From: Dendrobates tinctorius
Lineage: Eukaryota
Assembly: GCF_039654945.1 (NCBI RefSeq)
Contig: NW_027361728.1
Span: forward strand, 58,652,001-58,716,000
Length of the DNA: 64,000 nt
Reading direction: 5' to 3'
This document shows positions 5,897 through 59,470 of this stretch, one piece after another. Both the position numbers and the translations under genes were made by a program. A model generated the notes under the pieces. It made no database searches and was not told the DNA's origin. It saw nothing but the letters and a program-made list of their open reading frames with translations. The number at the start of each line of letters is the position of its first letter. Position 1 is the stretch's first letter.

Positions 5897-6867
5897 ATAT
5901 CTAATATTTAATGATTATTAAAAGTCTTTCCATCCTTATGTGATTTTTTTTTTAGATAGATGATTATAAGTGGGGGGGGGGGTGGTCACGCAGATCCTCA
6001 CTGCTGACACCAATTGTGAAAGATCGCAGCCAGGGGGTCGTAACTGAACCACCCACACTGTTATTTTTGTCACAAATAGCCCTCTGCTGCACCCTACCAT
6101 CTGGATGATTATGCAATTGACCGACGATTGACAGGGAGGAGGCTGTGACTGTTTCCATTAAGGCCGGTTATCGGGAAACTAACAGTGAGCGTATGGTATA
6201 TACACCTCCGATTCCCACGCACTGGATATGTGTATATACCCCCGGTGTGGTCACAGCTAGCTCCACGATAACCCCAGAACTACTTGCTGTCATTACAGGT
6301 CATTTTTTATATACAGGCCAACTGGATTAATAGTTTATCGAACAGAACTATTAAATTTTACATGATAGGCAGTGTTTATAAAAAATATACAAAATATGTT
6401 TTCAAAGAGGACAAAAAAATACAGCATATACTGTTGCATAAAATAAAAATGGATTCACAGAGAAATTACTAAGCTGGACACTGAGATGGCTCAGCTAGCG
6501 GACGGAAGCAATCTGATTGAAAACAACTGGTTAATGGGATCAAGCCCACCCTGATATGTATTTTCCTCAGCAATGAACACATCATATTCACCTTTTACCA
6601 GCATGTAAGTTACACCTCACCCCCTGCCCCTGTGATGACCTCATGTTGGACGGGTTGCAGAATGTTCTCAGCCCTTCAGGATTTTATAAAATTCGCAACA
6701 TTTACAATATCTTCACTCCTGACTATGCAGAAGTTAGAGATCTCCTCCATAATTTTTATTGGGATTTTAACCTGTCGTCGTCACATAATGTGGGACGTTC
6801 AGAGACGTTGTGCCTTTTCCAAATTAAATTGTAAATTTCAAACATGTACACAGAAGAGCCACTCTAA

Positions 6868-9020
6868 AGCTGCTTTCACATATCAGTTTTTTGCCATCAG
6901 GCGCAATCTGTCAAATTTTGAAAAAACGGATCCGGCGACTGATGCCGCCGGATCTGTTTTTTTCTCATAGACTTGTATTAGAGACGAATTCCAACTGATG
7001 GCCGCACGTTTCATCCGTCGTTCACCAAATCCGTCAGAAATTCTATGTCCGTCGGTTGGAGACAATGGACATAGGAACGTTTTTTTGTCTCTGTCGAAAA
7101 GTCGGACAGCGACAGATCCGGCGCCGTCCGTCATTTGCTAGAATGGAAGCCAGTGCTATCTGACAAATGACGGAATCCGTCGCTGGATTCTGTTTGTTTA
7201 ACTGCGCATGCGCCAACACTGTATGGTGTGTGCGGGCTATGGGGCTGTGCGGGGCTGTGCGCGGGGGTATGCGGGTCTGTGCGGAGGTCTGTGCGGGGGG
7301 CTGCGCAGGGGTATGCGGGGCTGTGTGGAGGTCTATGCGGGGGCCTGTGTGTGTGTGCGTAAGCATCGTCCGATGGGACTACAAGTGACAGTGATTGACA
7401 CATTAGCCAATGATGGGACAGTAGTAGTCCCATCATCCGGCTAATGTGTTGAATGTCAAAAAACAAAAACATACACACATATATAGTTCATACACACCAT
7501 CTACACCTAATCCCTGAAGCCATCAATCACCTGTAAAATATTAAAATAATAAACCAACAATATACTCCCTGTGCCCGATGTAATCCAATTAATACAATTA
7601 TCCCACGACGATCCCCCGTGGAGAGTTGTCACATCAGCTGATGCGACCACTCTCCAGGGGCTCCGGTGATACAATGACAGAGATAATCCTCCGCATTGTA
7701 TCACTTGGCCGCCGACAAGTCACCTGAGTTCACCTGTCACTTTGCGGCACTACTGTCATGATCCATACTGGATCAGGACAGATATAGTGCACTAGTAACC
7801 TTTTTTTTCTCAAGCTGTGCTTGGAGATATTTTTGCCCCCGGTGGCCATTTGGATTATTGCACGGTGGGGTTGTTTGTTCTAAGTTTGCCCCATGGTGGT
7901 GGTGAGTGTCATTGCACTCTGCTTCTTTAGTTAAGTGCTCATGTTTATAATACAGGTCTGATTGCTGGCTCTGCTATAAAAGAGTCACAAGTGTTGCAAT
8001 CAGCGTTGGTGATAGTACTCATTTCAACCATCCTTGGTGGAGGAAGGAGCTGGAGAGCGTTCCTTGCAGCACTGTCTTAGCCCTGGTGTGGAAGGAGTCA
8101 TAGGGGATTTCCTTGTAGCTCTGACAGAGCTTGGTGGCAGCGTTTCAGGAGGAGAGCTGCATGCTGGTGGTGGACTCTGTTGCCAGGAGCAAGTGCACAG
8201 AGTAAAGCTAAGTGGTGTTCCCCTGTTTGTGTTTTCCCTTTGTGTGTATTAGTACAGCGGTGGGGCCAGTGCCTGCGCCACCCAGCTCCCTAGTAAGGGA
8301 TAGGTGTAGGGTGTGCTAGGGCGAAAGGTATCCTGAGCGGCGTCCAGTGCGGAACCGGCATAAGGAACGTTAGGAGCATTAGGGACACTGACTCAGGGGA
8401 GTGCAGGAGGTCTCCACGTCCCCTTTCCCTATCGCAGGGCCCTCCGTTGTAACTGTGTTCCCTCCCCCTTGTCTTGTTGTTTACAGTTACCGGCCTGCGG
8501 GCAGTGTCACACAGGACAGTATCACATGCCGCGTCTTGTTGTCTCAGTTACCGGCCTGCTGGTCGCGTCACACAGAACGGGTCCACGTGACAACTACAGC
8601 ATGAGAATTTTCTCATGCTGTAGTGTTGTAAAGTGAGAGGCTTATCTCCGAAGACACATTGATGGAAGGTTATCTCCGGTCAGTGTGTCATCTGAGGCCT
8701 ATAGAGAGGTCATATCTGCTGATATCTCTATGGATATCTATGGATATATCTATAGATATATCTATGTATTCTATCTATCCCATATCTATCTATAGATCTG
8801 TCTGTCTGTGGGCGTTTTTAAAAACGGATCTGTCAAAAAGCGGAAGAAACATAAAAAAACAGATGCGACGGATCAATTTTTTTTTACGGATCCGGCTAGC
8901 GGATCCGTAGAAAAAAACGGATCCATCCCATCAGTTTTTCACAATCTGTGATGGATCCATCGATCCATTGAGCCAACGGATTGTGACTGATGGCAAAAAA
9001 CTTGATATGTCAAAGCAGCC
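6868..9020. mobile_element. Non-autonomous PIF/Harbinger-type element hosting a solo LTR
   Basis: TIRs AGCTGCTTTCACATATCAGTTTTTTGCCATCAG / CTGATGGCAAAAAACTTGATATGTCAAAGCAGCC; TAA target duplication on both sides. Confidence 0.8.
7754..8592. mobile_element. Solo LTR (~839 bp)
   Basis: TGTCA...TGACA termini, flanked by 5-bp TSD ACTAC (7749-7753, 8593-8597). Confidence 0.85.
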
Positions 9021-9760: not shown

Positions 9761-10071
9761 TAGTGATGAGCGAGCATACTCATTGCTCGGGTTTTCCCGC
9801 GTATGCTCGGGTGTCCTCCTTGTATTTTGGCGTGCTCGGAGATTTAGTTTTCGTCATCTCAGCTGCATGATTTGCGGCTGCTGGACAGGCTGAATACATG
9901 TGAGGAATGCCTGTTTGTTAGGGAATCTCCACATGTATTCAGCCTGTCCAGCAGCCGCAAATCATGCAGCTGAGATGACGAAAACTAAATCTCCCAGCAC
10001 GCCAAAATACTCGGAGGACACCCGAGCATGCTTGGGAAAACCCGAGCAACGAGTATACTCGCTCATCACTA
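9761..10071. mobile_element. hAT MITE, near-perfect palindrome
   Basis: TIR TAGTGATGAGCGAG; perfect 8-bp TSD GTCAGGAT; TIR resembles that of the large hAT at 28948 (TAGAGTTGAGCGA). Confidence 0.9.
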
Positions 10072-24339: not shown

Positions 24340-27260
24340 GCAACATAAATTCCTTCTTTAAGTTCAAGCCCAAAGGTACTCGGGTGTTTAATAAATAAAT
24401 CCAAAATGCTTCCCTATCCCGCATTTTTTTTACCCTATCTCCACCACGTATATTACCATGCACCTGTTCTATTGCATAAACACTAAATTGTGCAACTTAT
24501 CTATTGTGCAGGTTTACAAAATGGTTGGATGCGTTAGATATATGACGGGTTGTGGGCTGAATGATATCATAAAAATGCTCTCTAAAGCCCCCGTTACACA
24601 CTGCGATATCGCTAGCAATATCGCTGTAAAGTCACCGATTTTGTGACGTAGCAGCGATATTGCTAGCGATATAGCTGCATGTGATACTTACCTCCGACCG
24701 GCTCCCCCGCTGGTTATTGCTGATCGCGCGAGAAGCTCCTGGACCATTTCTCGTCGTCAGCTTCCTGCTGGGTTTCCTGTGGCGCCGACGAGCGACGCGT
24801 GGAGCCGGGCGGGAGGACGTCAGGATCGCCTCGTCTGACAGGTAAGTAGCGATCCCCGTCCCCAGCGATGTCGCTGGTGAGATCTGCCTGTGTGGCAGCT
24901 CACTAGCGACCACCTAGCGATGCACCAGCGATCCTGACCGCGTCATATCGCTGGTCGGGATCGCTGGTGCATCGCTAGGTGTAACTGTACCCTAATCCTG
25001 TCTTTTAATCTTCTGATCGTGGAGCCCACACATAGCAATCTGCATGCTGAACACTCTATTATGTATACAACATAATCTGAGTTGCAATTTAGAAAACTCT
25101 TAATTTTGAACTTCTTTATATTTTTTGAGCAAGAAAAAACAGACGTTTTTTTAGAACGTAGGCATGTTTTACAAGGAGATTGCCCACATCTAAAAAACCC
25201 TGTGGTGGACAACCAAGTGGAAACATTTTTTGTCTGAACAGCACCATAAAAGCTGGGGGATAAAGAATTAGCTAAAGTCGGGGCACGTCTGGAAACAATT
25301 CTAATACCATCCTTCAATATAGTATCCATAATATCGTCATCTCTCAGAATATTTAGATTTCGATGCACTATGTCAGAAATTGACTTAAAATGAGTACTAT
25401 ATGTAAGAACCAGGACCGGCTGTTCTGAACAAAAATTAGTATTATTACTTTTAGATTCAATCTGACATTTGGAATTTGGTTCAACATTCGGTGAAATGAG
25501 TTCCGCTCTGGATTTTTTATCTACTATACTGAAAGCACGATTTACAGTCCAATCAGGATATTTTCTATTTTTGAGACGTTTTTCAATGTTCCTTTTTTCA
25601 CTATCAAAAATTGTGTTGTCACTGCAATTTCTTTTTGCTCTGATAACCTCACCCACTGGAATTGATTGAATCGTATGTGGTGGGTGGAAACTGCATGCGT
25701 GAAGTATGGTGTTGCCTGCGTTTTTTTTGCGATACGTACAACTGCTGATAGTGTTAAAAGGGATACCAGTCAAACACAAATCCAAAAAATTAATACTTTT
25801 TTTAATCAAATGTATGGGTAAATTTGAGATTGAAATGATTATTATTGATGTAAAATTGGAATAACTCTAAAGAAACTGAATCACCTTGCCACACTAGTAT
25901 CAGGTCATCAATGTACCTAGAATACCATTTGATGTTAATAAAAAATGGATTATCTGTGCAAAAGATGTACTGTTCTTCCCACCACGCCATAACTAGATTC
26001 GCTACTGACGGGGAGAATTTAGCTCCCATTGAAACTCCACTTTTCTGGAGAAAATTTTTTTTGTCAAACAAGAAAAAATTGTGAGATAAAAGAAAAGCAA
26101 GCACTGAGATGATATACACCTGCAACTCATCATTGTATGAACTATATTTATACAAATGAAACTGAACGGCGTGCAAAGCAATTCTATGGGGAATGGACGT
26201 ATATAGGGCAACCACATCACAAGTTAACCATGACCATTCAGGGTCCCAACGTTACCCCATTGAACATACTTAATACATCCTTGGAATCCTTCAGGTAACC
26301 AGGAGTTCTCTGAACTAGTGGCTGCAAAATTGTGTCAAGCCATTCTCCTAAATGTTCACTGAAGGATCCTATTCCCGATACAATGGGACGCATGGGGGGT
26401 GGAAAAATATTTTTGTGCGTTTTTGGTAATGCATGCAAGATCGGAATGACTGGATTTAATACATGCAAATACTCTACTTGTTTTTTAGTGAAAAAACCCT
26501 GACTGAATCCCTCATCAATCACACATTTACACATTTTTGAAAATTCTGCTGAGGGGTCTGATTCAAGAAAATAATAAATACCATTATCTAGTAACATGTT
26601 ATAGATAGCATTTGCATAATCAGATTTGTTGAGAACCACTACAGATCCGCCCTTATCCGACATCTTAATAATGATATTGGTATTTGTTTTCAATTTGATT
26701 AAAGCATTTCGTTCATCTTTTGATAAATTATGTTTATAAGAACGAGAAGGAATCTCTGTTGCGAGATTACGCAAATCCCGTACAATATTGTCCTGGAAAC
26801 GATCCATAGAATCAGTTCTGGTGTGTACCGGATAAAAGAAAAGATTTCTTGTCTTAAACATGGAAATCACATTGTCATTTTTAGCAGTCATGTCGGTAGT
26901 ATCCATATCCATAAGGGTTAACAATCCATTTTGTTCCAGAAAACGTTTTCCAGCAAACTCATTAGTGACACTAATCGGAGTTGGGACCTGTGTTTTCTCT
27001 TCTGTGAAAAAATGTTTTTTCACCGTCAGGTCCCTGACAAATTTATTAATGTCTTTTAAAATAGAAAAAATATTTAAATCTGTGTTTGTTGGAGCAAAAT
27101 TCAACCCCAAAGATAACACTCTGGTTTCAGTTTCAGGTAGAACATCAGATGATAAATTAATTACGTCTAACGAGATGTCTTGGACTGACTTCTCAGTCCG
27201 TTCTTGAATATAGATGGGATGTTTGCTGTGTTTCCTACCGCCTCTCCTGGTGCGTTTTTT
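24340..27260 (-). pseudogene. PLE RT + GIY-YIG endonuclease ORF, disrupted
   Basis: NLS..VLSLGLNFAPT, SDKGG, LPKTHK, RPIVSG, LYTSIPH, GVSMG, RYIDD, FLDL, VVYIIEC...VGST; two frameshifts and a MITE insertion. Confidence 0.9.
24586..24992. mobile_element. Harbinger-type MITE (GCGAT/ATCGC-rich) inserted in the PLE endonuclease
   Basis: TIRs AGCCCCCGTTACAC / GTGTAACTGTACCC, TAA TSD; same family as 59046-59451 in the opposite orientation. Confidence 0.88.
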
Positions 27261-28054
27261 GGCACATTGTTAGACCTTTTCTGTTTGTGGTAATAACTCA
27301 TTTGAGATTTATTACCATAATTGACATGATGTGTGTTAACTTCAGGGTTGTTTGAAGACTCCACAGAAACATCCGATTCCAAGTCCGAAGAAGAAAAAGT
27401 CACTTGATTCCGGTGTGCAGAAGAAAAAAAAGTGCGAGTGCGTTTCTTTAATATCGATCTGGGTGGAGTAGGTTGCCTTTCCCATCTGCCCCATTCATAA
27501 ACTTGATTGTTCGTGTAATCAAATATATCCCTGCCAAATTTCTTTTTCTTTATAGAAATAATAGATTCTTCCAGGGAATGTATCTTAGATTTCAGATCTT
27601 TTTGAAAATTTTCATATTCCTCCACAGTAACAGCAGTTTTTAGAGACAACAGATCCTTATTTAAACTGGTTTTAATACTAGACAGTTCTTCATTTTCATA
27701 TTTAACTATTAGCTCCATCAATTTTCTGGAGCACTCAGATAATATAATGTTCCAGTCAGACACAAAGGCATCATTATACACCGTGGTTGGAATTTTCTTT
27801 ATTCTTAATCCTCTTGGTATAATATTCTGTGAGATATAATTTTCAAGCGTGGCTTGGTCCCACCAGATGCGTGTCTCATTAAGAGAAAGTTTCTCTATTG
27901 CAAGCATAGTATTCAATATGTCCGGTGAAGTGTCTACATTTTTGCTCACTGAACTGAATACTTGTGCAGCACTTTCTCTTCTAGAAGGATCAATCAATGT
28001 CTCCATGTGGAAAACAGATGGGGTTGGGAAAGACAATATACTTGGAGCAAACAA
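27167..28054 (-). CDS. PLE upstream ORF (IPRGLRI motif, coiled-coil-like), intact
   Basis: Open 295 codons (likely ATG start at MET...); overlaps the RT frame by ~100 nt. Confidence 0.75.
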   Translation of the reverse strand: MFAPSILSFPTPSVFHMETLIDPSRRESAAQVFSSVSKNVDTSPDILNTMLAIEKLSLNETRIWWDQATLENYISQNIIPRGLRIKKIPTTVYNDAFVSDWNIILSECSRKLMELIVKYENEELSSIKTSLNKDLLSLKTAVTVEEYENFQKDLKSKIHSLEESIISIKKKKFGRDIFDYTNNQVYEWGRWERQPTPPRSILKKRTRTFFSSAHRNQVTFSSSDLESDVSVESSNNPEVNTHHVNYGNKSQMSYYHKQKRSNNVPKNAPGEAVGNTANIPSIFKNGLRSQSKTSR

Positions 28055-30192
28055 AATATTAAATTGAAAATAATGATGTTAAAACCAAATCAATGACATC
28101 ATTCCCAATTCAAAATGAGCACTACACGTGTTCGAAACGCGTCCAGTTATCTAGGACATTCCTTCCTCCAGTATACACTGGTTATCAAGCAGCTTATTAC
28201 CTTTTAATTTGTTTCAATAAAGATTTTGGATTTTATCTCCGGAGCTGGATACCTTCTTTTTTCACAAGTACCTGACGTCAAGCAGAGACGCTTCCTTGCT
28301 CGGATAGAACTACTCATGTGCGGTGTGGACATCACTATAAGGGTGAGCTGAATCAACTTTTTTCTACAAAATTATGTGGACAGAAAAATGAAAAAGGTAT
28401 GGCTTTTGGAAAAAGGGATAGAGAAAATGAAAAAAATGGAAAATAGCCCATCGGGAAGGGGTGAAGTCGTTTGCCCACTATTTCTGCATATGTAGTTGAA
28501 TTCTTAGCAGATACTCTAACCTCAGTGTTACGGGTCCAGGGGACTGGTAGTCAATACAAATAACAAGTATATGAAAAGGCTCAAATGTTTTTACATTAGT
28601 AGGAGACTGCAAGAGGCAGGGGCGCACCAATCATGAGGCAACTTGAGTCAGTTGTCTCAAGCGGCGCACCTGCTGTTAAAAAGGGGGACGGCACCTGCGG
28701 GGGCCGTTCTTTCAGATGCTGTCTTGTGCCTGTATTGGGCCGCTCTTCTCTCCCTGACATCCTGCTATCTCCTGATGTGCCGCTGCCTGCTTCATACTGG
28801 GAAAATATGCACTTAAATGATTACGGGTGTGCGGTGGTTTTTACCCTCCGGGTTCAGCAACTCAGAGAGGGGAGGTGTCCTGCAAGAGCAGAACACTGGC
28901 CAATGAATGCTCTCACATCACTGACAGAAGAGCTGATTGGCCAGTGCTAGAGTTGAGCGACTTTTGGTTTTTTAGAGTCGAGTTTCGTTTCGTGAAACCC
29001 GACTTTTCCAAAAGTCGGGTCGAGCAAGATTGGCCGATTATAGGGAAAAGTCGGGGTCGTCCCGAAACACGAAACCCAATGTAAGTCAATGGGGAATAAA
29101 AGTCGGCAGTGAGAGGAGGACAGGAAACACACCTACAGTGCCCATTTGAATGCCAAAAGCATCAATTCTTCTTACTTAAGCTTGTCAACCTTAATTAACT
29201 TCATAATACAAGTTACGCACTGAAAAATGGGGGTTATTTGGCTAAAGCTGTGGGGGGGTAGGGCTGGCTCCAGGTTTTCATGTGCCCTGGGCGAAAGAGC
29301 GCCCCTTTAACACATACCACAACTCATCATGCTCCGATACGGCAGAGAAATAGCGGTATAGTACAATAAAAAATACTTCACTTTTTACATCTCATGACGA
29401 GGCCCATCTATTTCTCCATACAGAATCATTGGTCCCATATAATGTTTGAAACAGTATATGATGAGCTCCACATAATGCTACAGTATATGTTGGTCCCCAT
29501 GGATGAAGCTCCACTGTCTTATGGGCCCAAATAATGCTCCAAACATAATGGGCCCCATTTCTAATGCTCTAGTGTATAATGGGCCCTGTAAATGCTCCTC
29601 CAGTGTCTGATGTCCACCTTTGGAATGTTCCAGTGTATGGTGGGCCCCATCTATCATTCTCCAGAGTATAGTGCTCCCCAAAAATTGCTGTCCCAACATT
29701 GAAAACAATCAAATAAGTCTCCTCGCTAGGGAATCCCTGTACTAGTCTGGACTCCTCGTCGTCCCCATCATCCATCTCACTGCACAGTATTTCAACCTTG
29801 CAAGTGCTGTGATCCTGAGCAAGCAGGGGGGGCCCACTCGTTGGCGACGGCACTGGCACAGGGCCCCTGATAGTACGGTGGTGTGTCTGATGGCGGGTGG
29901 GCCGAACTTGCACTTTCATCTGCAGCTTCCTCTTTGTCACCGTGTAAGATGGAACTGTATATGGGAAGGGTAACCTGAGTTTCATCAGGGTCAGATTCAG
30001 GCCGTGTAGCGTGCGAGGGGAATGTAGTGGTCTGGGTCAATGTACCAGCAGATTCATTGAGCAGTGGCTGGGCATCAGTGCACTTGTGTCGCCCCCAGGA
30101 GTACGGTCGCCACAGTGGCATTACCTTCCTCCTAGGGAGTGTGATGTCATGCTTGGGAGCAACGAAGGATCTCTCTAGCAGGTTAACTGATT

Positions 30193-30641
30193 GGGCGGCG
30201 TTATTCCCACGAGTCATGACCCTCCAAACAGCGTTCATGAAGGCAAAGTGTTTGTTTTACGTGGGCAGTATGGTTGCAAAGCTGAACCTTAAAGGAATGT
30301 CCAGAAGGGCACCACCAGGAGTGGAGCCTACGGTTAAATTCGACTCCACCTGGGAAACCTCAACCATGCCAGCTACAGAAAAGATGCACACATTGCAAGC
30401 TTAATTCCGTTAACGAACGAGACTCCGTCATGCCCCGCGGTCCGAGTCCGGCTTACTAGAGGGACACGTGAGGCTCTGGTGTGTCATGCCCTTACATGTC
30501 CGTGGCTGCATGTGCGCTACACTGAAAAGGCCAGCGTTTGTCGCTTACAGGTGCAGATAACCCGCTGAACAACGTTAGTGATGGGGATCACTGATTACAA
30601 TTATTACCCGCGAACGATGATTTCCCAGTAAGTGCAGGTCA
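30193..30641 (+). pseudogene. Degenerate, internally deleted 18S rRNA fragment (3' half) inside the hAT
   Basis: Colinear SSU rRNA signature blocks: GGCGGCGTTATTCCC, GTATGGTTGCAAAGCTGAAcCTTAAAGGAAT, AAGGGCACCACCAGGAGTGGAGCCT, TTAATTCCGtTAACGAACGAGACT, TAGAGGGAC, GCGCTACACTGA, GTGATGGGGATC, TTCCCAGTAAGTGC. Confidence 0.9.
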
Positions 30642-30750
30642 ACCGCAGTTCCGGAATTAGGCCTAACCGTCATTCCTGAAAAAATGAATAACTTACGTGT
30701 GCAAACCACAGGTGCTGTAGCTTGCTTAACAGCTCGCCAGCCGTTCTCAC

Positions 30751-31670
30751 GCCCAGTATGGATTAGACGTGATTGCACAAAGGTGAGAAAGGGTACCGTA
30801 TCCCCGGATAACATGTATGGATAGCGTACACATTCAAAATATATGTCTATACATCAGGAGGCAGGCTCAGACGGTGTTAGGCCCAGTATGGCTTGCACGT
30901 GATTGCACAAAGGTGAGAAAGGGTACCGTATCCCCGGATAACATGTATGGATAGCGTACACATTCAAAATATATGTCTATACATCAGGACAGGCTCAGAC
31001 GGTGTTAGGCCCAGTTTGGCTTGCACGTGATTGCACAAAGGTGAGAAAGGGTACCGTATCCCGGATAACATGTATGGATAGCGTACACATTCAAAATATA
31101 TGTCTATACATCAGGAGGCAGGCTCAGACGGTGTTAGGCCCAGTATGGCTTGCACGTGATTGCACAAAGGTGAGAAAGGGTACCGTATCCCCGGATAACA
31201 TGTATGGATAGCGTACACATTCAAAATATATGTCTATACATCAGGAGGCAGGCTCAGACGGTGTTAGGCCCAGTATGGATTGCACGTGATTGCACAAAGG
31301 TGAGAAAGGGTACCGTATCCCCGGATAACATGTATGGATAGCGTACACATTCAAAATATATGTCTATACATCAGGAGGCAGGCTCAGACGGTGTTAGGCC
31401 CAGTATGGATTGCACGTGATTGCACAAAGGTGAGAAAGGGTACCGTATCCCCGGATAACATGTATGGATAGCGTACACATTCATAATATATGTCTATACA
31501 TCAGGAGGCAGGCTCAGACGGTGTTAGGCCCAGTATGACTTGCACGTGATTGCACAAAGGTGAGAAAGGGTACCGTATCCCCGGATAACATGTATGGATA
31601 GCGTACATATTCAAAATATATGTCTATACATCAGGAGGCAGGCTCAGACGGTGTCAGGCACAGTATGGAT
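30751..31670. repeat. Tandem array, ~7 x 130 bp, 3' of the hAT transposase
   Basis: GATTGCACAAAGGTGAG recurs at 30770, 30901 and so on; near-identical units. Confidence 0.95.
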
Positions 31671-32090
31671 TTGACGGCCCAAACTACACAGCGGAGGAGC
31701 AGGGAGAGGTAAAGATTGCAAATGCTGGGGCTCTGCCCAAGCAAGGGGGGCCCACTCGTGGGCGTCGGTACTGGCACTGGGCCCCTCATAGTACGGCGGT
31801 GTGTCTGACGGCGGGTGTGCACCACCACCATCAGAGACACTTGATTGCACTATGAGGGACCCTGTGCCAGTGCCCGCGCCCAAGAGTCGGCCTACCCACC
31901 TGTCCAGGGCAACGGCACTCGCACGGTGTCGTGCGCTAGGTGGTGACCCCGGCCATGGGGGGGGAGGCAGCACAGTTAGGGAGTTTTAGAAAGTGGCATA
32001 TGTTGATGTTGGACATTCAGCTGATGCAAAAGGCGAAATAGGTCAAGTCCCAGGAAGAGGTAGACCAAAGCAAGCCATTTTTCTGTCACC

Positions 32091-35000
32091 CTATGTGTCA
32101 TCAGGGAAAGGTGGGACAAAATCCTTGGAAACCCATGCATGGTTCATTTTAATGAAGGTTAGATCATCCACATTTTGGGTTGACAGACGGGTCCTTTTTT
32201 CTGTCAGGATTGATCCAGCTGCACTGAAGACTCTTTCCGATAGCACACTTGCAGCAGGGCAAGCGAGCTCCTGTAAGGCATATTGTGCCAATTCAGGCCA
32301 GGTGTCCAGTTTAGCGGCCTAATAGTCAAAGGGGAATGACCTGTGTGGGAGAACATCGATATGGGAGGAAAAGTAGTTTGTAACCATAGTTGACAACTGC
32401 TGTCTCCTGTCACTTTCCATCGATGCAGTATTACCAGTTGTGTGAGCGGTACTTGAAAAATCAGTCCACAACATTGTCATGAAACCCCTGTCTCCAACGC
32501 CACTTCTGCTGTGTGCACCATGAACACCTCTGCCAAGCTGCCCCCGGCCCGTACGGCTCGTGTGAGAACCATCCTCGCTGCTGTGTGCTGGGAATGCCTC
32601 AAGCAACCGATTTACCAGAGTTGCTTGTTTATTAGCCAATATTAGGTCAAGGTTCTCCTGTGGCATGATGTTTTGTAATTTGCCTTTATAGCGTGGATCC
32701 AGGATGCTGGCCAACCAGTAGTCGTCATCGTTCATCATTTTGGCAATGCGGGGGTCCCTTTTTAGGCTCTGCAAGGCATAATCTGACATGTGGGCCAATG
32801 TTCCCGGTGTCAATGATGCACTGCGAGTGCTGGTTGGAGGAGCACTTTCTGGCAAATCCACATCCCTCCAGTCACGCACAAACCCTGTACCAGACCTTGC
32901 CACGCCAACATTTTCACTTGCCCCACGAGATGCATCCTCCTCCCCTAAGTAATCATCCCCATCATCATCCTCCTCCTCCTCTTCTTCCTCCACCTCGTCC
33001 AGGAGAGGTCCTTGAGCAGACAATGGCTGAATGTCATCAAGGATTCCCTCCTCCTCTTCCTCCTCATCAACATTGGCTGCAGACGCCTGCTCCATAAGGT
33101 GCGTCAAAGTTTGCATGAGCAGACGCATAAGTGGGATGCTCATGCTTAGGTCTCAAAGTGCCTGGCCGTGTATCCTCCCACAAATGCATTATGGCCTGCC
33201 TCTGCTCGCACAGCCGCTCCACCATGTGCAGGGTGCAGTTCCACCTTGTTGCAATGTCGATAATGAGGCGGTGGTTGGGAAGGTGGAGCAATCGCTGCAG
33301 CTTCTGCATACGAATGGAGTGAACAGGCGACCGGCGGATGTGCGCGCACAGTCTTCGCACCTTCTGGAGCAGGGCTGTTAACTCCGGATAATTTTTGAGG
33401 AAGCACTGCACCACCAGGTTCAAGGTGTGAGCCAAGCAAGGTATGTGGCTGAGTTTTGAAAGGGGTATGGCCGTTATCACTAACTACCTTGCCTGCCTCA
33501 AGATGTACACTGCCCAGCCATGACTCAGTTTGTCGCTTAAAGTACTCGGGCAGCACATCGGCAGTGTGTCTGTCGCCCAAACACATCATCTGCAACACAG
33601 CCTGCTGACGCTTTCCACTAGCTGCTCGATAGGGGGACACCTCGTGTGCAACAGTGGCAGCTGCAGATGGAGTGCTCGTACGACTGCGCTCTGTGGATGA
33701 GCTTTCGCTTCTGGAGGAGGAGGAAGAGGGTCGAACGCCAACTGTTTCCTATACCGTGGGCTAGGCAGCACTGTCCCACTACCGCTGTCCCCTGTGGACC
33801 CTGCATCCACCACATTAACCCAGTGCGCAGTGATGGACACGTAACGGCCCTGGCGATGCCGACTGGACCATGCATCAGTTGTGAGGTGCACCTTTCCACT
33901 CACTGACTGCTTGAGTGCATGGACAATGCGGTCTTTTACATGATGGTGGAGGGCTGGGATGGCTTTGCGAGAGAAGAAGTGGCGACTGGGTAGGTCATAG
34001 CGTGGTACTGCATAGGCCATGAGTTCGCAGAAAGCTGCGCTTTCCACCAACCGATAGGGCATCATCTCAAACGAGATTAGTTTGGCAATGTGGGCGTTCA
34101 AACCCAGTGTACGCGGATGAGAGACTGAGTACTGAGTACTTTCTTGACCTACTCATAGTGTCTGGGAGGGTGAGCTGGACTTGAGAGCTGCATATGGTGG
34201 AAGTAGCGGTGGACAGGGCGGACTGAGAGAGGGTTGATGATGGTGATGGAGTTGGTGTTCTTTCTGATGGCCTAGATTCAGTATTTCGTTGATATAACAG
34301 TGGGATTCCCTGACTGCTGTGGCCTTGCAACGACACCACAACATTTGCTGCTGTGCTAACCGGTGGGCTTACAGTGGGGGAAACAATGTAGCGTTGCTGA
34401 CTACCTTCTTTGTGATCAGTTGCACATGTGGCACTTGAGGTTTGGTGTTGTGTCCACGCTTGCAAGTGCATGCTGGTTAAATGTCTAAGCATGCAACTGG
34501 TATTCAAATTTTTCAGATTTTTCCCTCGGCTAAAGGTCTTTGCGCACTTCTTACAGATAACCTTGGCCTGATCATGAGGATTTTGTTCAAAAAAGTGCCA
34601 CACTGCACTCTTCCTACTTTGGCAGACATTTTGCGGCCTAGCACGCTGTGATCTTTTGACCCTCTGGACAAGCTGTCCAGCAACTCTTTTGATTTTTGGA
34701 ACCTGTCTTTGGAGTGCTCCGGGCCTGCCAGATAACAGCTGTTGCGATGTCGATGTCTGCTGTGGATGCTCCTCATCTGAGCTATTGGAAGCAGCACCCT
34801 CTTCCCCCAATGGATGCCAATCTGGGTCAACAACTGGGTCATCCATCACCTCCTCTTCAATGTCATGTGCACCTTCCTCTGTGTCACCGTGTATGGTGGT
34901 ATAGTGTGCGGGAAGGGGCACCTGAGTCTCATCAGGGTCAGAATCTGGCTCTGTACACTGCGAGGACAATGTAGTGCTCTGAGTGAATGTACCAGCAGAA

Positions 35001-35503
35001 TCATCTATCAGCGGCTGTGCATCAGTGCACTCCATGTCAGATTCATCTTGGTCTGGGTAATTCACCATTTCACTTGATAATCCAGGCATGGTATGTGAAA
35101 ACAGCTCCATGGAGTAATCAGTAGTATGGCCTGCGTCATCCTTCAATCTTGGTTGGGGTGAAGGACACAAGGAAAGGTGTGCTTCATGAACATGAGCCTC
35201 CAATGACGACTCAGTGCTTTTATTTTTTACAACTTCAGAAGAGGAGGCGATAGAGCTGGAGGCTGAGTCAGCAATGTAAGACAAAACTTTTTCCTGAAGC
35301 TCTGGCTTTAAAAGCGGTTTGCCAACTCCTAGAAAACTAAGCCTTCGAGGCCTTGTGGAGCCAGACGATGACGCAGGCTCAACACCTCCTGCATTCGGTC
35401 CTATTTTGCTTTTGCCACTACCATCAGATCCACCACCAACACCATCATTACCAGCTGCCAACCCCCGCCCAATTCCACGGCCTCTTCCACCAGCCTTCCT
35501 CAT
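32091..35503 (-). pseudogene. hAT transposase with BED finger, disrupted
   Basis: SAVWHFF..CKKC..MLRHLTSMH (BED), VHLTTDAWS, VVSDNG, HIPCLAHTLNL, TRWN, LDPRYK, ACPAASVLSERVFSAAG; frameshifts near 34130, 33700, 33480 and 33140, and a TAG at 32319. Confidence 0.93.
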
Positions 35504-35580
35504 TTTTGGTAGAAATGTAGACAAAATCCAACAAACTATATAGTAATGTAAAACAAGGTACAAGGTGTCTATAGGACAGG

Positions 35581-36470
35581 GGAGATTTTGAATTTCTGCA
35601 GACACTTGTGGACACTGGACACTTATGGATTGTGTGAGGCCCACTGAATATCAGAGCGCTATGTCACAGGCTCGATGGCACAGGTGTGAAAAAAGTGACT
35701 ACAGGATAAGGGAGATTTTGAATTTCTGCAGACACTAGTGGACACTGGACACTGGACACTTTTGGATTGTGTGAGGCCCACTGAATATAAGAGCGCTATG
35801 TCACAGGCTCGATGGCACAGGTGTGAAAAAAGTGACTACAGGATAAGGGAGATTTTGAATTTCTGCAGACACTAGTGGACACTGGACACTTTTGGATTGT
35901 GTGAGGCCCACTGAATATCAGAGCGCTATGTCACAGGTGTGAAAAAAGTGACTACAGGATAAGGGAGATTTTGAATTTCTGCACACACTAGTGGACACTG
36001 GACACTTTTGGATTGTGTGAGGCCCACTGAATATCAGAGCGCTATGTCACAGGCTCAATGGCACAGGTGTGAAAAAAGTGACTACAGGATAAGGGAGATT
36101 TTGAATTTCTGCACACACTAGTGGACACTGGACACTTTTGGATTGTGTGAGGCCCACTGAATATCAGAGCGCTATGTCACAGGCTCGATGGCACAGGTGT
36201 GAAAAAAGTGACTACAGGATAAGGGAGATTTTGAATTTCTGCAGACACTAGTGGACACTGGACACTTTTGGATTGTGTGAGGCCCACTGAATATCAGAGC
36301 GCTATGTCACAGGGTCGATGGCACAGGTGTGAAAAAAGTGACTACAGGATAAGGGAGATTTTGAATTTCTGCAGACACTAGTGGACACTGGACACTTTTG
36401 GATTGTGTGAGGCCCACTGAATATCAGAGCGCTATGTCACAGGCTCGATGGCACAGGTGTGAAAAAAGTG
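35581..36470. repeat. Tandem array, ~7 x 130 bp, 5' of the hAT transposase
   Basis: GGAGATTTTG at 35581, 35711, 35848, 35964, 36094, 36224, 36354. Confidence 0.95.
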
Positions 36471-37298
36471 AATTGTAGAATTGGGCAGAATAGGAATCTC
36501 CCTAGAGTGTAGGTCTGTAAGAACGGAACAAGTCCTCCACTTATCCTTCCACAGTGACACACAGATAGCTTCACTGTGGCCGTGATAACAGCCGTTACAC
36601 GGTACTGAGAGGAGCGTACACCGCTGTATGGTGTGAAAAAATGCACGCTCAGTACCTCAGCAGGACAAAAAAAAAAATTGGGATTGCTTTTAAAAAAGCA
36701 GTTTGCAGAGCAGTGGGTAAACAGCAATGCAGCTGTCAGGAAGCCTTAGAAGGCAGCCTAACAACCAACACCGCTGATCCACCACAATATAGCCTCCCCT
36801 TGCACTGCACACACAGTGACTGGTGTGTTGTACAGGCAAAATCGCTAGCAGCCGAAGCAATTTTTTTTTCTTCTTCCCTGCCTAACGCTCTCCCTACAGA
36901 ATCAGCAACCTCTCCCTATGCTAAGATCGGCAGAAGTAAGATGGCGGTCGGCGTGCACGCCCTTTTATAACCCCTGTGACGCCCACCAAAGCAAGCCAAT
37001 CACTTGCATGCCCTTCTGAAAGATGGTGGTGACCCCTGCCTATGTCATCACGTTGCCCACAGTGTCCGTGGATCCTGATTGGCTGAAAAAGAGCGCAAAA
37101 CAAACTTTTGAAACGCGACTTTGGCGCGTAAGTCGCCGACCTCGTGGCCGACCTCATCCTAGGGTCGGGTTTCGTTTCATGAAACCCGACTTTGCCAAAA
37201 GTCGGCGACTTTTGAAATTTTTCGACCCGTTTCGCTCAACTCTAGCCAGTGCTCCTGTCCTCCTGCATGGCACATCTTTGAAGGGAAGAAGTGAGAGC

Positions 37299-47401: not shown

Positions 47402-47673
47402 TAGCGACGAGGGAATGTGCTCAGATAAGGTGTTATCTGCGCATGCTCATGTGCTAACCGAGTCTTCGGCGTGCTCAAAAAATATGGTCAAGTCTCCGTG
47501 GCTGCATGTTTTGCGGCTGCTCAACGGCACATATGGATTGCCTGTTTGTTAGGCAATCCCGAGACATACAGCCACGGAGACTCAACCATATTTTTTGAGC
47601 ATGCCAAAAACACTCGTTTAGCACATGCGCATGCTCGGATAAAACCTTATCTGAGTACATTCGCTCATCACTA
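47402..47673. mobile_element. hAT MITE, palindromic
   Basis: Ends TCGCTCATCACTA; TSD ATGGTCAC / GTGGTCAC. Confidence 0.85.
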
Positions 47674-51174: not shown

Positions 51175-54100
51175 CTAGGGAGAGGCTGCCTGATATAGGG
51201 CACGCAGGAGGACTTCCGGGTTAGGGAGAGGCGGAGTCAGGGATCCGAGGGATAGGACGCCTGGACGGGGGGGCGTGCACCTGCGTACCTGGAGAGAGGC
51301 GGAGGAGGCGGGCCGAGAGGACCGGAAGTGCCTGGAAAGCGTGGAGCCAGGGAGGAGAGCGGAGACCGCCGGCGTCATGGCAACAGGGGACGCAGCAGAG
51401 GCGGGCGGCGCGGCGGCGGCAGGAGCAGGGCCCGAAGCAAGGTCAGGACGCGCTGTGGTAGCAGCGGTCCGAACGGCGGCTGCAGAGGCCGGAGGACGCG
51501 CTGGGGAGGTGAGCGTGACAGTACCCCCCTCCTTAAGCCCCCCCCTCTTAAGGCCAGAAAGGAATCGGGCTAGGATACGAGGAGCCTGAATATTCTCGCG
51601 AGGCTCCCAAGATCTCTCCTCGGGACCGAATCCTTTCCAGTCAATTAAGTAGAGGGTCCTACCTCTGGATCTCTTCATCGCAAGAATGTCTTTAACTTCA
51701 AAGACATCCTGTGCGGACACAGGCAGGGGTGAGCGGCCAGTGGAGGAGTGAAAACGGTTCAGGATAACAGGCTTTAGGAGAGAAGCATGGAACGAATCAG
51801 GAATTCTCAGCGAGGCGGGAAGTTTTAACTTGTAGGCGACATCATTGATACGAGCCAAGACTTCAAATGGACCTATATACCGAGGACCCAGTTTGTACGA
51901 GGGTTGTTTTAGGCGGACAAACTTTGAAGACAGCCATACTTTATCTCCAGGTTGGTACAGTGGAGAATCCAGGCGTTTTTTGTCCGCATGGCTCTTGATC
52001 CTACCTAGAGCCAGATCAAGCGCGGTTTTGGTCTCCTGCCAGACCCTGGAGAACTCCTCGGTCAGAAGATCGGCCGCCGGCACACCCGAGACAGGAGGTA
52101 CCGGCAGAGGTACACCTGGATGTTGTCCATAGACAATGAAGAAGGGTGATTTGGAGGAGGATTCACTGGTATGGTTGTTGTAGGTGAATTCAGCCCAAGG
52201 GAGTAGGTTGGACCAATCATTCTGGTGGGCGTTGGAAAAATGCCGAAGATAAGAAACAAGGATTTGATTCGTGCGTTCAGCCTGGCCGTTGGTCTGGGGA
52301 TGGTAGGAAGAGGAAAAGTCCAACGTTACCTCCATCATGCTGCACAGGGCCCTCCAAAACCGTGAGGTGAACTGAACCCCTCTGTCGGAAACGATATGTT
52401 TGGGGAAGCCGTGAATCCGGAACACATGGGTGACGAAAATCTTCGCCAATTCAGGCGCGGAGGGTAAGCCGGGCAGAGCAATAAAATGGGCCATCTTAGA
52501 AAACCGATCCACCACAACCAAGATGACGGTGTGACCAGAAGACCGGGGCAGATCGGTAATAAAGTCCATTGCAACATGCTGCCAGGGAGCCGAAGGAATC
52601 GGAAGCGGGTGTAAGAGTCCGGAGGGTAGATGTCGTGGGACTTTGTTTCTGGCACACGATGGGCACGAGGCGATGAAGTCTCGGACATCTTGACGAAGCG
52701 ATGGCCACCAATAAAAACGAGAAATGAGAAGGAGCGTTTTCTTGAGGCCTACATGGCCGGCTAGTTTGGAGGCATGGCCCCAACGTAGTACTCGTCTCCT
52801 CTCACTTTCCTGCACGAAGGTCTTACCCGATGGTAATGACGTCAAGTTAACAGGTGCGACCATGATAACTTTGCTGGGATCCACGATGTGCGATGGCTCC
52901 TCTTCATGATCCGAGACCAGAAAGGACCGGGACAACGCATCTGCCTTGAGATTCTTGTCTCCAGGACGGAAATGCAGTTCAAAGTCAAAGCGGGCAAAGA
53001 ATAGTGACCACCTGGCTTGCCGGGGGTTAAGTCTTTGTGCAGACCGGATGTATGCCAGGTTCTTGTGGTCGGTGTAGATTTTGAACGGATGCACAGCTCC
53101 CTCCAGAAGGTACCGCCACTCCTCCAGGGCCAATTTGATGGCAAGCAACTCTCTGTCACCAATGGCGTAGTTCCTCTCTGCGGTGGAGAACTTCTTCGAG
53201 AAAAAACTGCAGGTGAGCAGACGGCCGGAGGGAGATCTCTGGGAAAGAACCGCCCCTGCTCCGATGGCTGATGCGTCTACTTCAAGAACAAAAGGTCTAT
53301 TGATCTCAGGACGATGGAGGATGGGAGCCGTAGCGAAAGCTTGTCTCAAGGCTTGAAAAGCATCCTCAGCTTCCGAGGGCCAGGGGAGAGGATTGGCTCC
53401 TTTACGGGTTAAGGCGGAGATTGGAGCAGTCAAGGTGGAAAAGTGTGAAATAAACTGCCGATAATAATTGGCAAAACCGAGGAAACGTTGAATCGCCTTG
53501 ATTCCCTGGGGACGCGGCCATTTGAGCACGGCGGACACTTTTCCTGGATCCATACGTAGGCCCGAGTCCGAAATGATATAACCCAGGAATGGCAGGGAAG
53601 ATTGCTCGAAGGCACATTTTTCGAGTTTGGCGTAGAGACGATGCTCTCTTAATCGTAGTAAGACTTGACGGACGTCTTTTCGGTGAGCAGCCAGGTCCGG
53701 GGAAAATACGAGAATGTCGTCCAAATACACCACTACACAGGAGTAGAGAAGATCTCGAAACACGTCGTTGACAAACTCCTGAAACACTGCGGGAGCATTG
53801 CACAGGCCAAAAGGCATAACTAAATACTCGTAGTGGCCGTCTCGGGTATTGAAAGCGGTCTTCCACTCGTCTCCGGAGCGAATGCGGACTAGATTATAGG
53901 CCCCTCGGAGATCCAATTTCGTGAAGACTCGTGCTCCCCGTAGACGGTCAAATAGCTCCGGAATGAGAGGCAGCGGGTATTTGTTTTTGATGGTGATGTT
54001 GTTGAGACCCCGATAATCAATGCAGGGGCGAAGAGATCCATCCTTTTTCTTGACGAAAAAGAAGCCTGCTCCTGCAGGTGACGACGACTTGCGAATAAAG

Positions 54101-58603: not shown

Positions 58604-58769
58604 ACATGAAGACAGAAGAGCAGGACTCCCTCATGTCTGTGTGCAGTGTATGGGAGACATTATAGCAGCTCCCATAAGCTCAGATAAGCTGAAAATTAGA
58701 AATAGAGGCTGTAAAAAGGAAAACTATTGAAAAGATTGAGGATACAAGTAATGGCGGGAAATATTTTGT

Positions 58770-59470
58770 GATGCAACAGCGATCTCACCTGCGATCTCGC
58801 TACATGTGACACGCAGCAGCGACCGGCCCCCCTGCTGGATATCGCTGATCGTGCAGGAATGTCCTGGGCCTTTTTTTAAACATCGGCGTCCCGCTGGCCA
58901 GCATGCATCGCTGTGTTTGATCGCTGGATCGTTGCTGCGTCGCTGAAGACATCTGCCTGTTTGGCAACTTACTAGCGATCATTTAGCGACGCACCAGCGA
59001 TCCCTACAGGTTGTATCGTTGTCGGGATCGCTGGTGCGTTGCTAAGGGTACCGTTACACTTAGCGATGCACCAGCGATCCCGACCACGATATGACACGGT
59101 CAGGATCGCTGGTGCATCGCTAAGTGGTCGCTAGTGAGCTGCAAAACAGGCAGATCTCACCAGCGACATAGCAGCGGTCGGGGGTCTCTACTTACCTGTC
59201 AAACGAGGCGATCCTGACGTCCTCCCGCCCGCGTCCACGCGTCACTCGTCGCCACAGCAGGAAGCCCAGCAGGAAGTGGGCGACGAGAAATGGCCCAGGA
59301 CGTTCTCGCGCGATCAGCGATAATCAGCAGGGGAGCCGGTTGGAGGTAAGTATCACACATAGCGATATCGCTAGCAATATCGCTGCAGCGTCACAAAACT
59401 AGTGACGTTATAGCGATATTGCTAGCGATATCGCTATGTGTAACGGGCCCTTTAGTGAAACGGGACCCTT
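58770..59470. mobile_element. Harbinger MITE remnant with a related MITE nested at 59046-59451
   Basis: Inner TIRs GGGTACCGTTACAC / GTGTAACGGGCCCT; the outer TIR resumes (GTGAAACGGGACCC) after the insert. Confidence 0.8.

What the first reader, a model, noticed from the sequence alone, without database searches (positions are those of the whole stretch)
30193..30641. hAT DNA transposon carrying a condensed 18S rRNA-derived cassette
Seen: inside the TIR/TSD-bounded hAT (28948-37244), about 450 bp contain at least eight colinear blocks matching conserved 3'-half SSU rRNA motifs on the plus strand, i.e. antisense to the transposase. Against the vertebrate 18S as I recall it, several internal stretches are cleanly missing (about 65 nt between GCAAGC and TTAATTCCG, plus shorter gaps) while the conserved cores remain. 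No poly(A) or own TSD is visible, so it looks like cargo of the element rather than a later retrocopy. Inference: a read-through transposase transcript would carry an anti-18S 3' region able to pair with ribosomes; alternatively a plus-strand rRNA-mimic RNA is made; or it is neutral captured DNA.
Basis: partly seen in the sequence, partly recalled or inferred. Interest (0 to 1): 0.85.

Follow-up and report, generated by a model that had tools for sequence, protein, structure and literature searches.

The report
Decayed 18S piece inside frog transposon
A very abundant cut-and-paste (hAT) transposon of a poison frog carries in its non-coding tail a decayed, shortened piece of the small-subunit ribosomal RNA gene; it looks like passive baggage, and matters mainly because it scatters false "18S" matches through the genome.

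Summary
Rfam's eukaryotic SSU rRNA model matches window 30263-30670 on the + strand (102 bits against a threshold of 50). The match lies inside a hAT element (28948-37244) with 13-bp inverted ends, an 8-bp target duplication and a broken minus-strand transposase. The piece belongs to the family, not to this copy. About 29,600 contigs of one DNA run lie on the 1.8-kb tail, contigs cross the left and right junctions, 16 runs from 5 studies hold most of its words, and a second organism holds it too. The "condensed" look comes from accumulated decay. One 24-nt gap is private to this copy, and other indels differ between subfamilies. 39 of 93 model base pairs are broken, the commonest variant carries an uncompensated helix-breaking change, and neither strand folds better than shuffles. 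This copy differs from the family majority by about 0.4%, while the piece differs at about 16% of strongly conserved rRNA positions, so capture is old and the copy young. Best reading: host rDNA captured once and carried passively. An anti-18S or mimic RNA is neither supported nor excluded; strand and RNA status could not be tested. The scan found the same cassette at least eight times on other DNA of this genome, and two follow-ups reached the same verdict.

The parts
28940..28947 (.). Left 8-bp target-site duplication GCCAGTGC
   Evidence: Read directly; identical to 37245-37252
28948..28960 (+). Terminal inverted repeat TAGAGTTGAGCGA, at the end downstream of the transposase gene
   Evidence: I19, 100% complementary; exact match
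28961..29100 (.). Subterminal region with short GTTTCG / AAGTCGG repeats, resembling 37160-37231 at the other end
   Evidence: D13, I3, I4; loose ends at 29018 read like the other terminus
29798..30084 (-). Partial duplicate of the element's own N-terminal coding region (about 80-85% alike to 34858-35031 and 31716-31820)
   Evidence: (D4, D6)
30193..30670 (+). 18S (SSU) rRNA-derived cassette. 30263-30670 is confirmed by Rfam; 30193-30262 rests on recall only
30475..30476 (+). Site of a 24-nt deletion private to this copy, bounded by a CTGG microhomology. The dominant family contigs carry the 24 nt here
   Evidence: table 4 (X5 39.3/39.3, X11 372.7/398.1) and table 8 records 15 and 32
30590..30592 (+). 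ACT, the major variant in organism A. TGG, the minor variant in A and in all organism B contigs here, is nearer the SSU consensus and keeps the model helix. The change is uncompensated
   Evidence: table 3; NC line over model ~1577-1600
30673..31709 (.). 130-bp tandem array (about 7-8 units) directly right of the cassette
   Evidence: (D2)
31749..31892 (.). Palindrome made of an inverted duplication of coding-like sequence
   Evidence: I2; only sub-threshold miRNA-like hits
32094..35503 (-). hAT transposase gene, broken by an in-frame stop at 32319-32321 and at least 3 frameshifts. zf-BED lies in the N-terminal piece and Dimer_Tnp_hAT at the C-terminus. The start at 35503 is inferred
35540..36572 (.). 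Second 130-bp tandem array, unrelated to the first, upstream of the transposase gene
   Evidence: (D1)
37232..37244 (-). Terminal inverted repeat
37245..37252 (.). Right 8-bp target-site duplication GCCAGTGC

Best explanation
The cassette is a dead fragment of a vertebrate-type 18S rRNA gene, from the 3' half (Rfam model 1118-1666). It was copied once into the non-coding tail of an ancestor of this hAT family. The most likely route (inferred) is filler DNA laid in by template switching during repair of the double-strand gap left by excision. That process would also explain the duplicated scraps of the element's own coding region beside it. Since then the piece has travelled passively with the element, losing bases and base pairs at random in the master lineage. 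A recent burst of transposition spread the decayed version to very many loci. It does not work as rRNA or as a structured RNA. Shown: its identity, the family-wide shared junctions, the structural decay, an old cassette in a young copy. Inferred: the capture mechanism and neutrality.
For: Identity: RF01960, 102 bits, E 2e-26. Family-wide: 16 runs of organism A from 5 studies hold at least 0.7 of the sampled words, and 4 runs of organism B hold 0.14-0.20. 29,619 contigs of DNA run X1 lie on 28900-30720 and all 30 bins are covered. Cassette bins carry 0.5-0.9 million summed depth, against 0.8-1.8 million for the rest of the tail. Contigs bridge the left junction (X5 record 32 at 30105-30607, X11 record 14, X1 record 3, organism B record 23) and the right junction (X1 record 8). 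Decay: 78 'v' marks mean 39 of 93 model pairs are non-canonical, and 12 of 76 capital consensus positions differ in model 1118-1206 (my counts). Two conserved CpG have become TpG in GCACGCG>GCATGTG. Fold z-scores are +0.54 and -0.28. Indels are graded: a 24-nt private deletion, a 3+4-nt indel at 30213/30217 absent from most organism B depth, one contig skipping 30312-30433, and a minor variant with a more 18S-like insert at 30478. The dominant ACT at 30590-92 breaks a helix that the minor, organism-B variant TGG keeps. Age contrast: about 8 sites in 1821 where nearly all contigs differ from this copy, against about 16% change at conserved rRNA positions. Neighbouring rearrangements fit sloppy gap repair.
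Against: Constraint could not be measured, because no copy sequences could be fetched and one search shows only 40 of 191 variable sites. The cassette has persisted through about 16% divergence without being lost. Its CpG observed/expected ratio (0.88) is above the element's (0.54) and the window median (0.52). Contigs from runs guessed to be RNA contain it. Each of these is compatible with some use, though also with a CpG-rich origin and read-through transcription of a high-copy repeat.
Confidence: 0.8

Rival explanations
1. Antisense 18S function. Transposase transcripts read through the tail and carry about 480 nt complementary to 18S. These would pair with pre-rRNA or feed or deflect small-RNA silencing, so the element is selected to keep the piece.
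For: The orientation is antisense to the transposase. No AATAAA lies on the minus strand anywhere in the tail, so read-through is plausible. One 26-nt run (30303-30328) is identical to the SSU consensus. The piece has been retained for a long time. Contigs in runs guessed to be RNA cover it.
Against: No strand or RNA evidence exists, since the contigs are unstranded and the RNA label is a guess. Complementarity is eroding and is being deleted differently in different copies and subfamilies. The cassette lies 1.4 kb past the stop codon, behind a 1-kb tandem array. The matching rRNA regions are buried in helices and proteins of the ribosome (general knowledge).
Confidence: 0.04
2. A benefit in cis unrelated to rRNA pairing. 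The piece might be kept as a CpG-rich or less methylated spacer, a transcript-stabilising 3' region, or stuffer that keeps the ends at a workable distance.
For: CpG observed/expected is 0.88 against 0.54 for the element, the highest of the element's interior. The piece is present at depths of the same order as the rest of the tail.
Against: 0.88 is only the 92nd percentile of 478-nt windows in this window, and is expected from a CpG-rich rDNA origin with partial decay. Internal deletions of 24 and 120 nt are tolerated in copies.
Confidence: 0.1
3. A plus-strand rRNA-mimic RNA is made from the cassette.
For: The + strand is the sense strand of 18S.
Against: 39 of 93 model pairs are broken, large parts of the domain are missing, and the fold z-score is +0.54. 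No promoter evidence was found.
Confidence: 0.02
4. A later, independent insertion (processed rRNA retrocopy) into this copy only, or an assembly chimera.
For: A short A6 run lies 8 nt after the last aligned base.
Against: The same junctions occur in thousands of contigs from several studies and two organisms. There is no own target duplication.
Confidence: 0.01

Closest known systems
Transduplication / Pack-type capture of host gene fragments by DNA transposons (Pack-MULEs; hAT and CACTA carriers in plants; Turmoil-1 in C. elegans, PMC2572040)
   Same: A host-derived fragment sits between the inverted ends and is amplified with the element. It is usually non-functional. Capture is thought to occur during gap repair.
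   Different: Here the carrier family encodes its own transposase, whereas Pack elements are non-autonomous. The cargo is rRNA, not protein-coding sequence. The host is a vertebrate.
rDNA-derived modules in transposable elements (review PMC10946416, Table 2: 5S-derived SINEs, Cassandra/Ajax, SINE28 from 28S, Pokey with IGS-derived repeats)
   Same: A piece of ribosomal DNA is built into a mobile element and dispersed genome-wide, producing false rDNA signals.
   Different: None of the listed cases is an 18S piece or a hAT element. In the 5S cases the module supplies a pol III promoter. Here no use is evident.
Dispersed rRNA pseudogenes / orphons
   Same: A truncated, mutated rRNA copy outside the rDNA array.
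   Different: It is not a solitary locus. It is copied by transposition with fixed junctions to element sequence.

Membership tests
hAT superfamily DNA transposon | 8-bp target-site duplication | tested here: met
   GCCAGTGC on both sides
hAT superfamily DNA transposon | Short terminal inverted repeats of the YARNG type | tested here: met
   13-bp TAGAGTTGAGCGA, perfect inverted pair. The YARNG motif is from general knowledge.
hAT superfamily DNA transposon | Transposase with a BED zinc finger and the C-terminal hAT dimerisation domain | tested here: met
   zf-BED E 6.9e-12. Dimer_Tnp_hAT E 1.7e-10 on window:32097-32318:-. 92% identity to a Dendrobates tinctorius hAT-domain protein.
hAT superfamily DNA transposon | Intact transposase reading frame (autonomous copy) | tested here: not met
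   In-frame stop at 32319-32321 and at least 3 frameshifts. This copy is dead.
Functional eukaryotic SSU rRNA gene | Match to RF01960 above the gathering score | tested here: met
   102.2 bits against 50, but for a fragment only
Functional eukaryotic SSU rRNA gene | Full-length coverage of the model | tested here: not met
   Model 1118-1666 of 1831 only, with internal gaps
Functional eukaryotic SSU rRNA gene | Helices preserved | tested here: not met
   39 of 93 model pairs are non-canonical (count). No fold signal.
Functional eukaryotic SSU rRNA gene | Sits in an rDNA unit | tested here: not met
   No other rRNA hit in the 64 kb. The flanks are element sequence.
Transduplicated cargo of a DNA transposon | Host-derived sequence between the inverted ends, with the same junctions in many copies | tested here: met
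   Contigs bridge both junctions in several runs and in two organisms
Transduplicated cargo of a DNA transposon | Pack-type carrier, i.e. non-autonomous and lacking a transposase | tested here: not met
   The element carries a (broken) transposase gene
Processed rRNA retrocopy / rRNA-derived SINE | Poly(A) tail and own target-site duplication | tested here: not met
   Only an A6 run, and no flanking direct repeat beyond a 6/7 chance-level match
Regulatory antisense RNA | Minus-strand transcription through the cassette | not testable with these tools
   All runs are kept as unstranded contigs and their RNA status is a guess
Regulatory antisense RNA | Sequence conserved above the neutral level among copies | tested here: inconclusive
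   7 of the 40 listed variable sites fall in the cassette, against about 11 expected by length. Only 40 of 191 sites are shown, ranked by support.

The most novel reading that the evidence does not exclude
The element keeps an antisense 18S segment in its transcripts because this interferes with host small-RNA silencing or with ribosome biogenesis, for example if the host cannot afford small RNAs that would also touch 18S. The cassette would then be a counter-defence module rather than baggage.
Probability: 0.04. Interest if true: 0.8.

Novelty: new member of a known kind. Interest (0 to 1): 0.3.

Why it matters
Capture of host sequence by DNA transposons and rDNA-derived modules in mobile elements are both known. 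An 18S piece in a transposase-encoding vertebrate hAT family is not in the 2024 catalogue of such cases (PMC10946416), nor in the two poison-frog genome papers checked. The practical effects are clearer. The cassette scatters thousands of false SSU rRNA matches, which can mislead rDNA annotation, 18S FISH, rRNA depletion or filtering of RNA-seq, and repeat classification. Its nested indels also offer ready subfamily markers for dating the family's bursts.

Tried and rejected
(1) Fetching other copies through proteins failed. The C-terminal transposase piece found Dendrobates tinctorius and Ranitomeya imitator proteins, but no DNA is served for those assemblies.

(2) An ORF spanning the left junction (30027-30404) found only one Logan protein. 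Its contig L001 shares 94 nt at 81% with the conserved rRNA core and has no Rfam hit, so it is unrelated to the family.

(3) Rfam on 30040-30275 alone gave no SSU hit, so the first 70 nt stay unconfirmed.

(4) Folding either strand gave no signal.

(5) A scan for poly(A) signals found no AATAAA on the minus strand in the tail, so the transcript end stays undefined.

(6) No other copy of the family lies in the window.

(7) Seven literature searches found no earlier description.

(8) Copy number was not estimated, because contig depths are not copy numbers.

(9) The host's own 18S was not available from any tool.

The window holds no N. Read laying was given 1,821 letters.

Full report
**What is there**

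Rfam's eukaryotic small-subunit rRNA model (RF01960) matches window 30263-30670 on the + strand. The score is 102.2 bits against a gathering score of 50, E 2e-26, covering model positions 1118-1666 of 1831. It is the only Rfam match above threshold in the 64 kb (repeated).

The match is colinear but shortened. 196 model positions are replaced by 76 nt. A sub-search places TTAATTCCGTTAACGAACGAGAC at model ~1320-1345, so roughly model 1256-1305 is gone, as is much of 1346-1440.

They resemble vertebrate 18S as I recall it, which is a lead and not a test. The Rfam-supported end is 30670, not 30641.

**The carrier**

- The inverted ends TAGAGTTGAGCGA lie at 28948-28960 and 37232-37244.
- They are flanked by the 8-bp duplication GCCAGTGC.
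- The minus strand carries a transposase with a BED zinc finger and the hAT C-terminal dimerisation domain.
- It is 92% identical over 286 residues to a Dendrobates tinctorius protein.
- This copy is dead, with an in-frame stop at 32319-32321 and at least three frameshifts.
- The natural stop is near 32094, so the element has a 3.1-kb non-coding tail.

Read on the + strand, the tail holds the following:
- subterminal repeats;
- a partial duplicate of the element's own N-terminal coding region (29798-30084);
- a 100-nt linker;
- the 18S piece;
- a 130-bp tandem array (30673-31709);
- a palindrome of coding-like sequence (31749-31892).

**Family-wide or private**

Sixteen runs of one organism, from five studies, hold at least 0.7 of the sampled words of 29700-30700. 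Four runs of a second organism hold 0.14-0.20.

I laid four runs on 28900-30720 at 80% or higher likeness.
- One DNA run gave 29,619 contigs covering all 30 bins.
- Cassette bins carry 0.5-0.9 million summed depth, the same order as the rest of the tail (0.8-1.8 million). Contig depth is not a copy number.
- Contigs cross the left junction in all four runs: X5 record 32 (30105-30607, 1 mismatch), X11 record 14 (0 mismatches), X1 record 3, and organism B record 23.
- One contig crosses the right junction (X1 record 8).
- No joint that neatly removes the cassette was reported.

So the piece is cargo of the family with fixed junctions, which points to a single capture. It is not a retrocopy into this copy and not an assembly chimera.

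**Is it condensed by design?**

No. The dominant contigs of two runs carry 24 nt more behind 30475 (39.3/39.3 and 372.7/398.1 of depth). Those 24 nt restore a conserved rRNA core. This copy lost them between two CTGG, a typical slippage or end-joining scar. That explains why other windows of this genome were noted with 471-477 letters and this one with 449.

Other indels are graded.
- A 3+4-nt difference at 30213/30217 is rare in organism A but carries most of the depth in organism B.
- One contig skips 30312-30433.
- A minor variant has a longer, more rRNA-like insert at 30478.
- One organism B loose end continues with rRNA-like letters where this copy has a gap at 30432/33. This last item could be genuine 18S, so I give it little weight.

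**Is structure or sequence maintained?**

- On the alignment I count 78 'v' marks, so 39 of 93 model base pairs are non-canonical.
- In model 1118-1206, 12 of 76 strongly conserved (capital) positions differ.
- Two conserved CpG read TpG.
- Neither strand folds better than shuffles (z +0.54 and -0.28).
- At 30590-92 the dominant variant reads ACT. A minor variant, about 13% of the DNA run's depth and all organism B contigs there, reads TGG. TGG is nearer the consensus and keeps the model helix. The successful subfamily therefore carries an uncompensated helix-breaking change.
- Variable sites listed in the cassette number 7 of 40, against about 11 expected by length. The difference is not significant, and the list is truncated and ranked by support.

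**Age**

Nearly all contigs differ from this copy at about 8 of 1821 sites (0.4%), plus the 24-nt deletion. The cassette differs at about 16% of near-invariant rRNA positions. Almost all the decay therefore predates the recent burst and is shared by the family. Either the piece rode in the master lineage for a long time, or it was already a decayed pseudogene when captured.

**Mechanism**

Shown: a host-type rRNA fragment, antisense to the transposase, fixed in the tail, decaying, and amplified by transposition.

Inferred: capture as filler DNA during repair of excision gaps. This is the accepted route for internal rearrangements and transduplication in cut-and-paste elements, and it fits the neighbouring scraps of the element's own coding sequence.

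Not resolved: retro-insertion of an rRNA fragment into the ancestor. There is only an A6 run and no target duplication.

**Functional readings**

An antisense 18S tail on read-through transposase RNA is physically possible. No AATAAA lies on the minus strand in the tail, and one 26-nt run is identical to the consensus. Contigs from runs guessed to be RNA contain the cassette. These contigs are unstranded, the RNA label is a guess, and a repeat this abundant is expected in any transcriptome.

The cassette's CpG observed/expected ratio (0.88 against 0.54 for the element and a window median of 0.52; 92nd percentile) is mildly odd. It is expected from a CpG-rich origin. I put passive baggage at 0.8, a cis benefit at 0.1 and antisense function at 0.04.

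**Comparison with what is known**

It works like transduplicated cargo of DNA transposons and belongs with rDNA-derived modules in mobile elements. The 2024 review table of such modules lists 5S-derived SINEs, Cassandra/Ajax, SINE28 and Pokey's IGS repeats, but no 18S piece and no hAT. The two poison-frog genome papers checked do not mention it, and further searches found nothing. It is therefore a new member of a known kind.

**Earlier notes of this scan**

The scan noted the same cassette on at least eight other pieces of this genome, and two follow-ups called it decayed baggage. My tests agree. They add the private 24-nt deletion, the graded indels and the uncompensated helix-breaking variant.

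**Limits**

- No sequences of other copies could be fetched.
- Strand and level of any RNA are unknown.

Noticed in passing
window 9761-10071: A 311-bp palindromic miniature element with ends TAGTGATGAGCGA (2 mismatches to the hAT ends studied here) and a perfect 8-bp target duplication GTCAGGAT. It is probably a hAT-type MITE of a related family.
   Followed up: partly
window 47661-47673: A third match to the same variant end TAGTGATGAGCGA on the minus strand. No partner end was looked for.
   Followed up: no
window 27167-28054 (-): A 295-aa ORF just left of the hAT insertion site.
   Followed up: no
window 31749-31892: A palindrome in the element's tail with 44-nt arms, 84% complementary. 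It gives sub-threshold plant and insect miRNA-model hits on both strands (39.9 bits against a gathering score of 150). It is probably just a hairpin made by inverted duplication.
   Followed up: partly
window 30673-31709 and 35540-36572: Two different 130-bp tandem arrays flank the transposase gene. They have the same period but no detectable similarity to each other.
   Followed up: partly
window 30193-30670: CpG observed/expected is 0.88 in the cassette, against 0.54 for the whole element and 0.21-0.45 in the second tandem array. This is higher than expected if the cassette had aged as methylated DNA, unless it started very CpG-rich.
   Followed up: partly
window ~6650-6900, 24350-24600, 53400-53600, 58700-59200: These are the stretches with the highest CpG observed/expected ratios in the window (1.1-1.3), against a median of 0.52. 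Their nature was not examined.
   Followed up: no
L001:281-374: A 2.3-kb Logan contig (SRR29282228) shares 94 nt at 81% with the conserved rRNA core of the cassette but has no Rfam hit. It may be another decayed rRNA scrap in an unidentified organism.
   Followed up: partly
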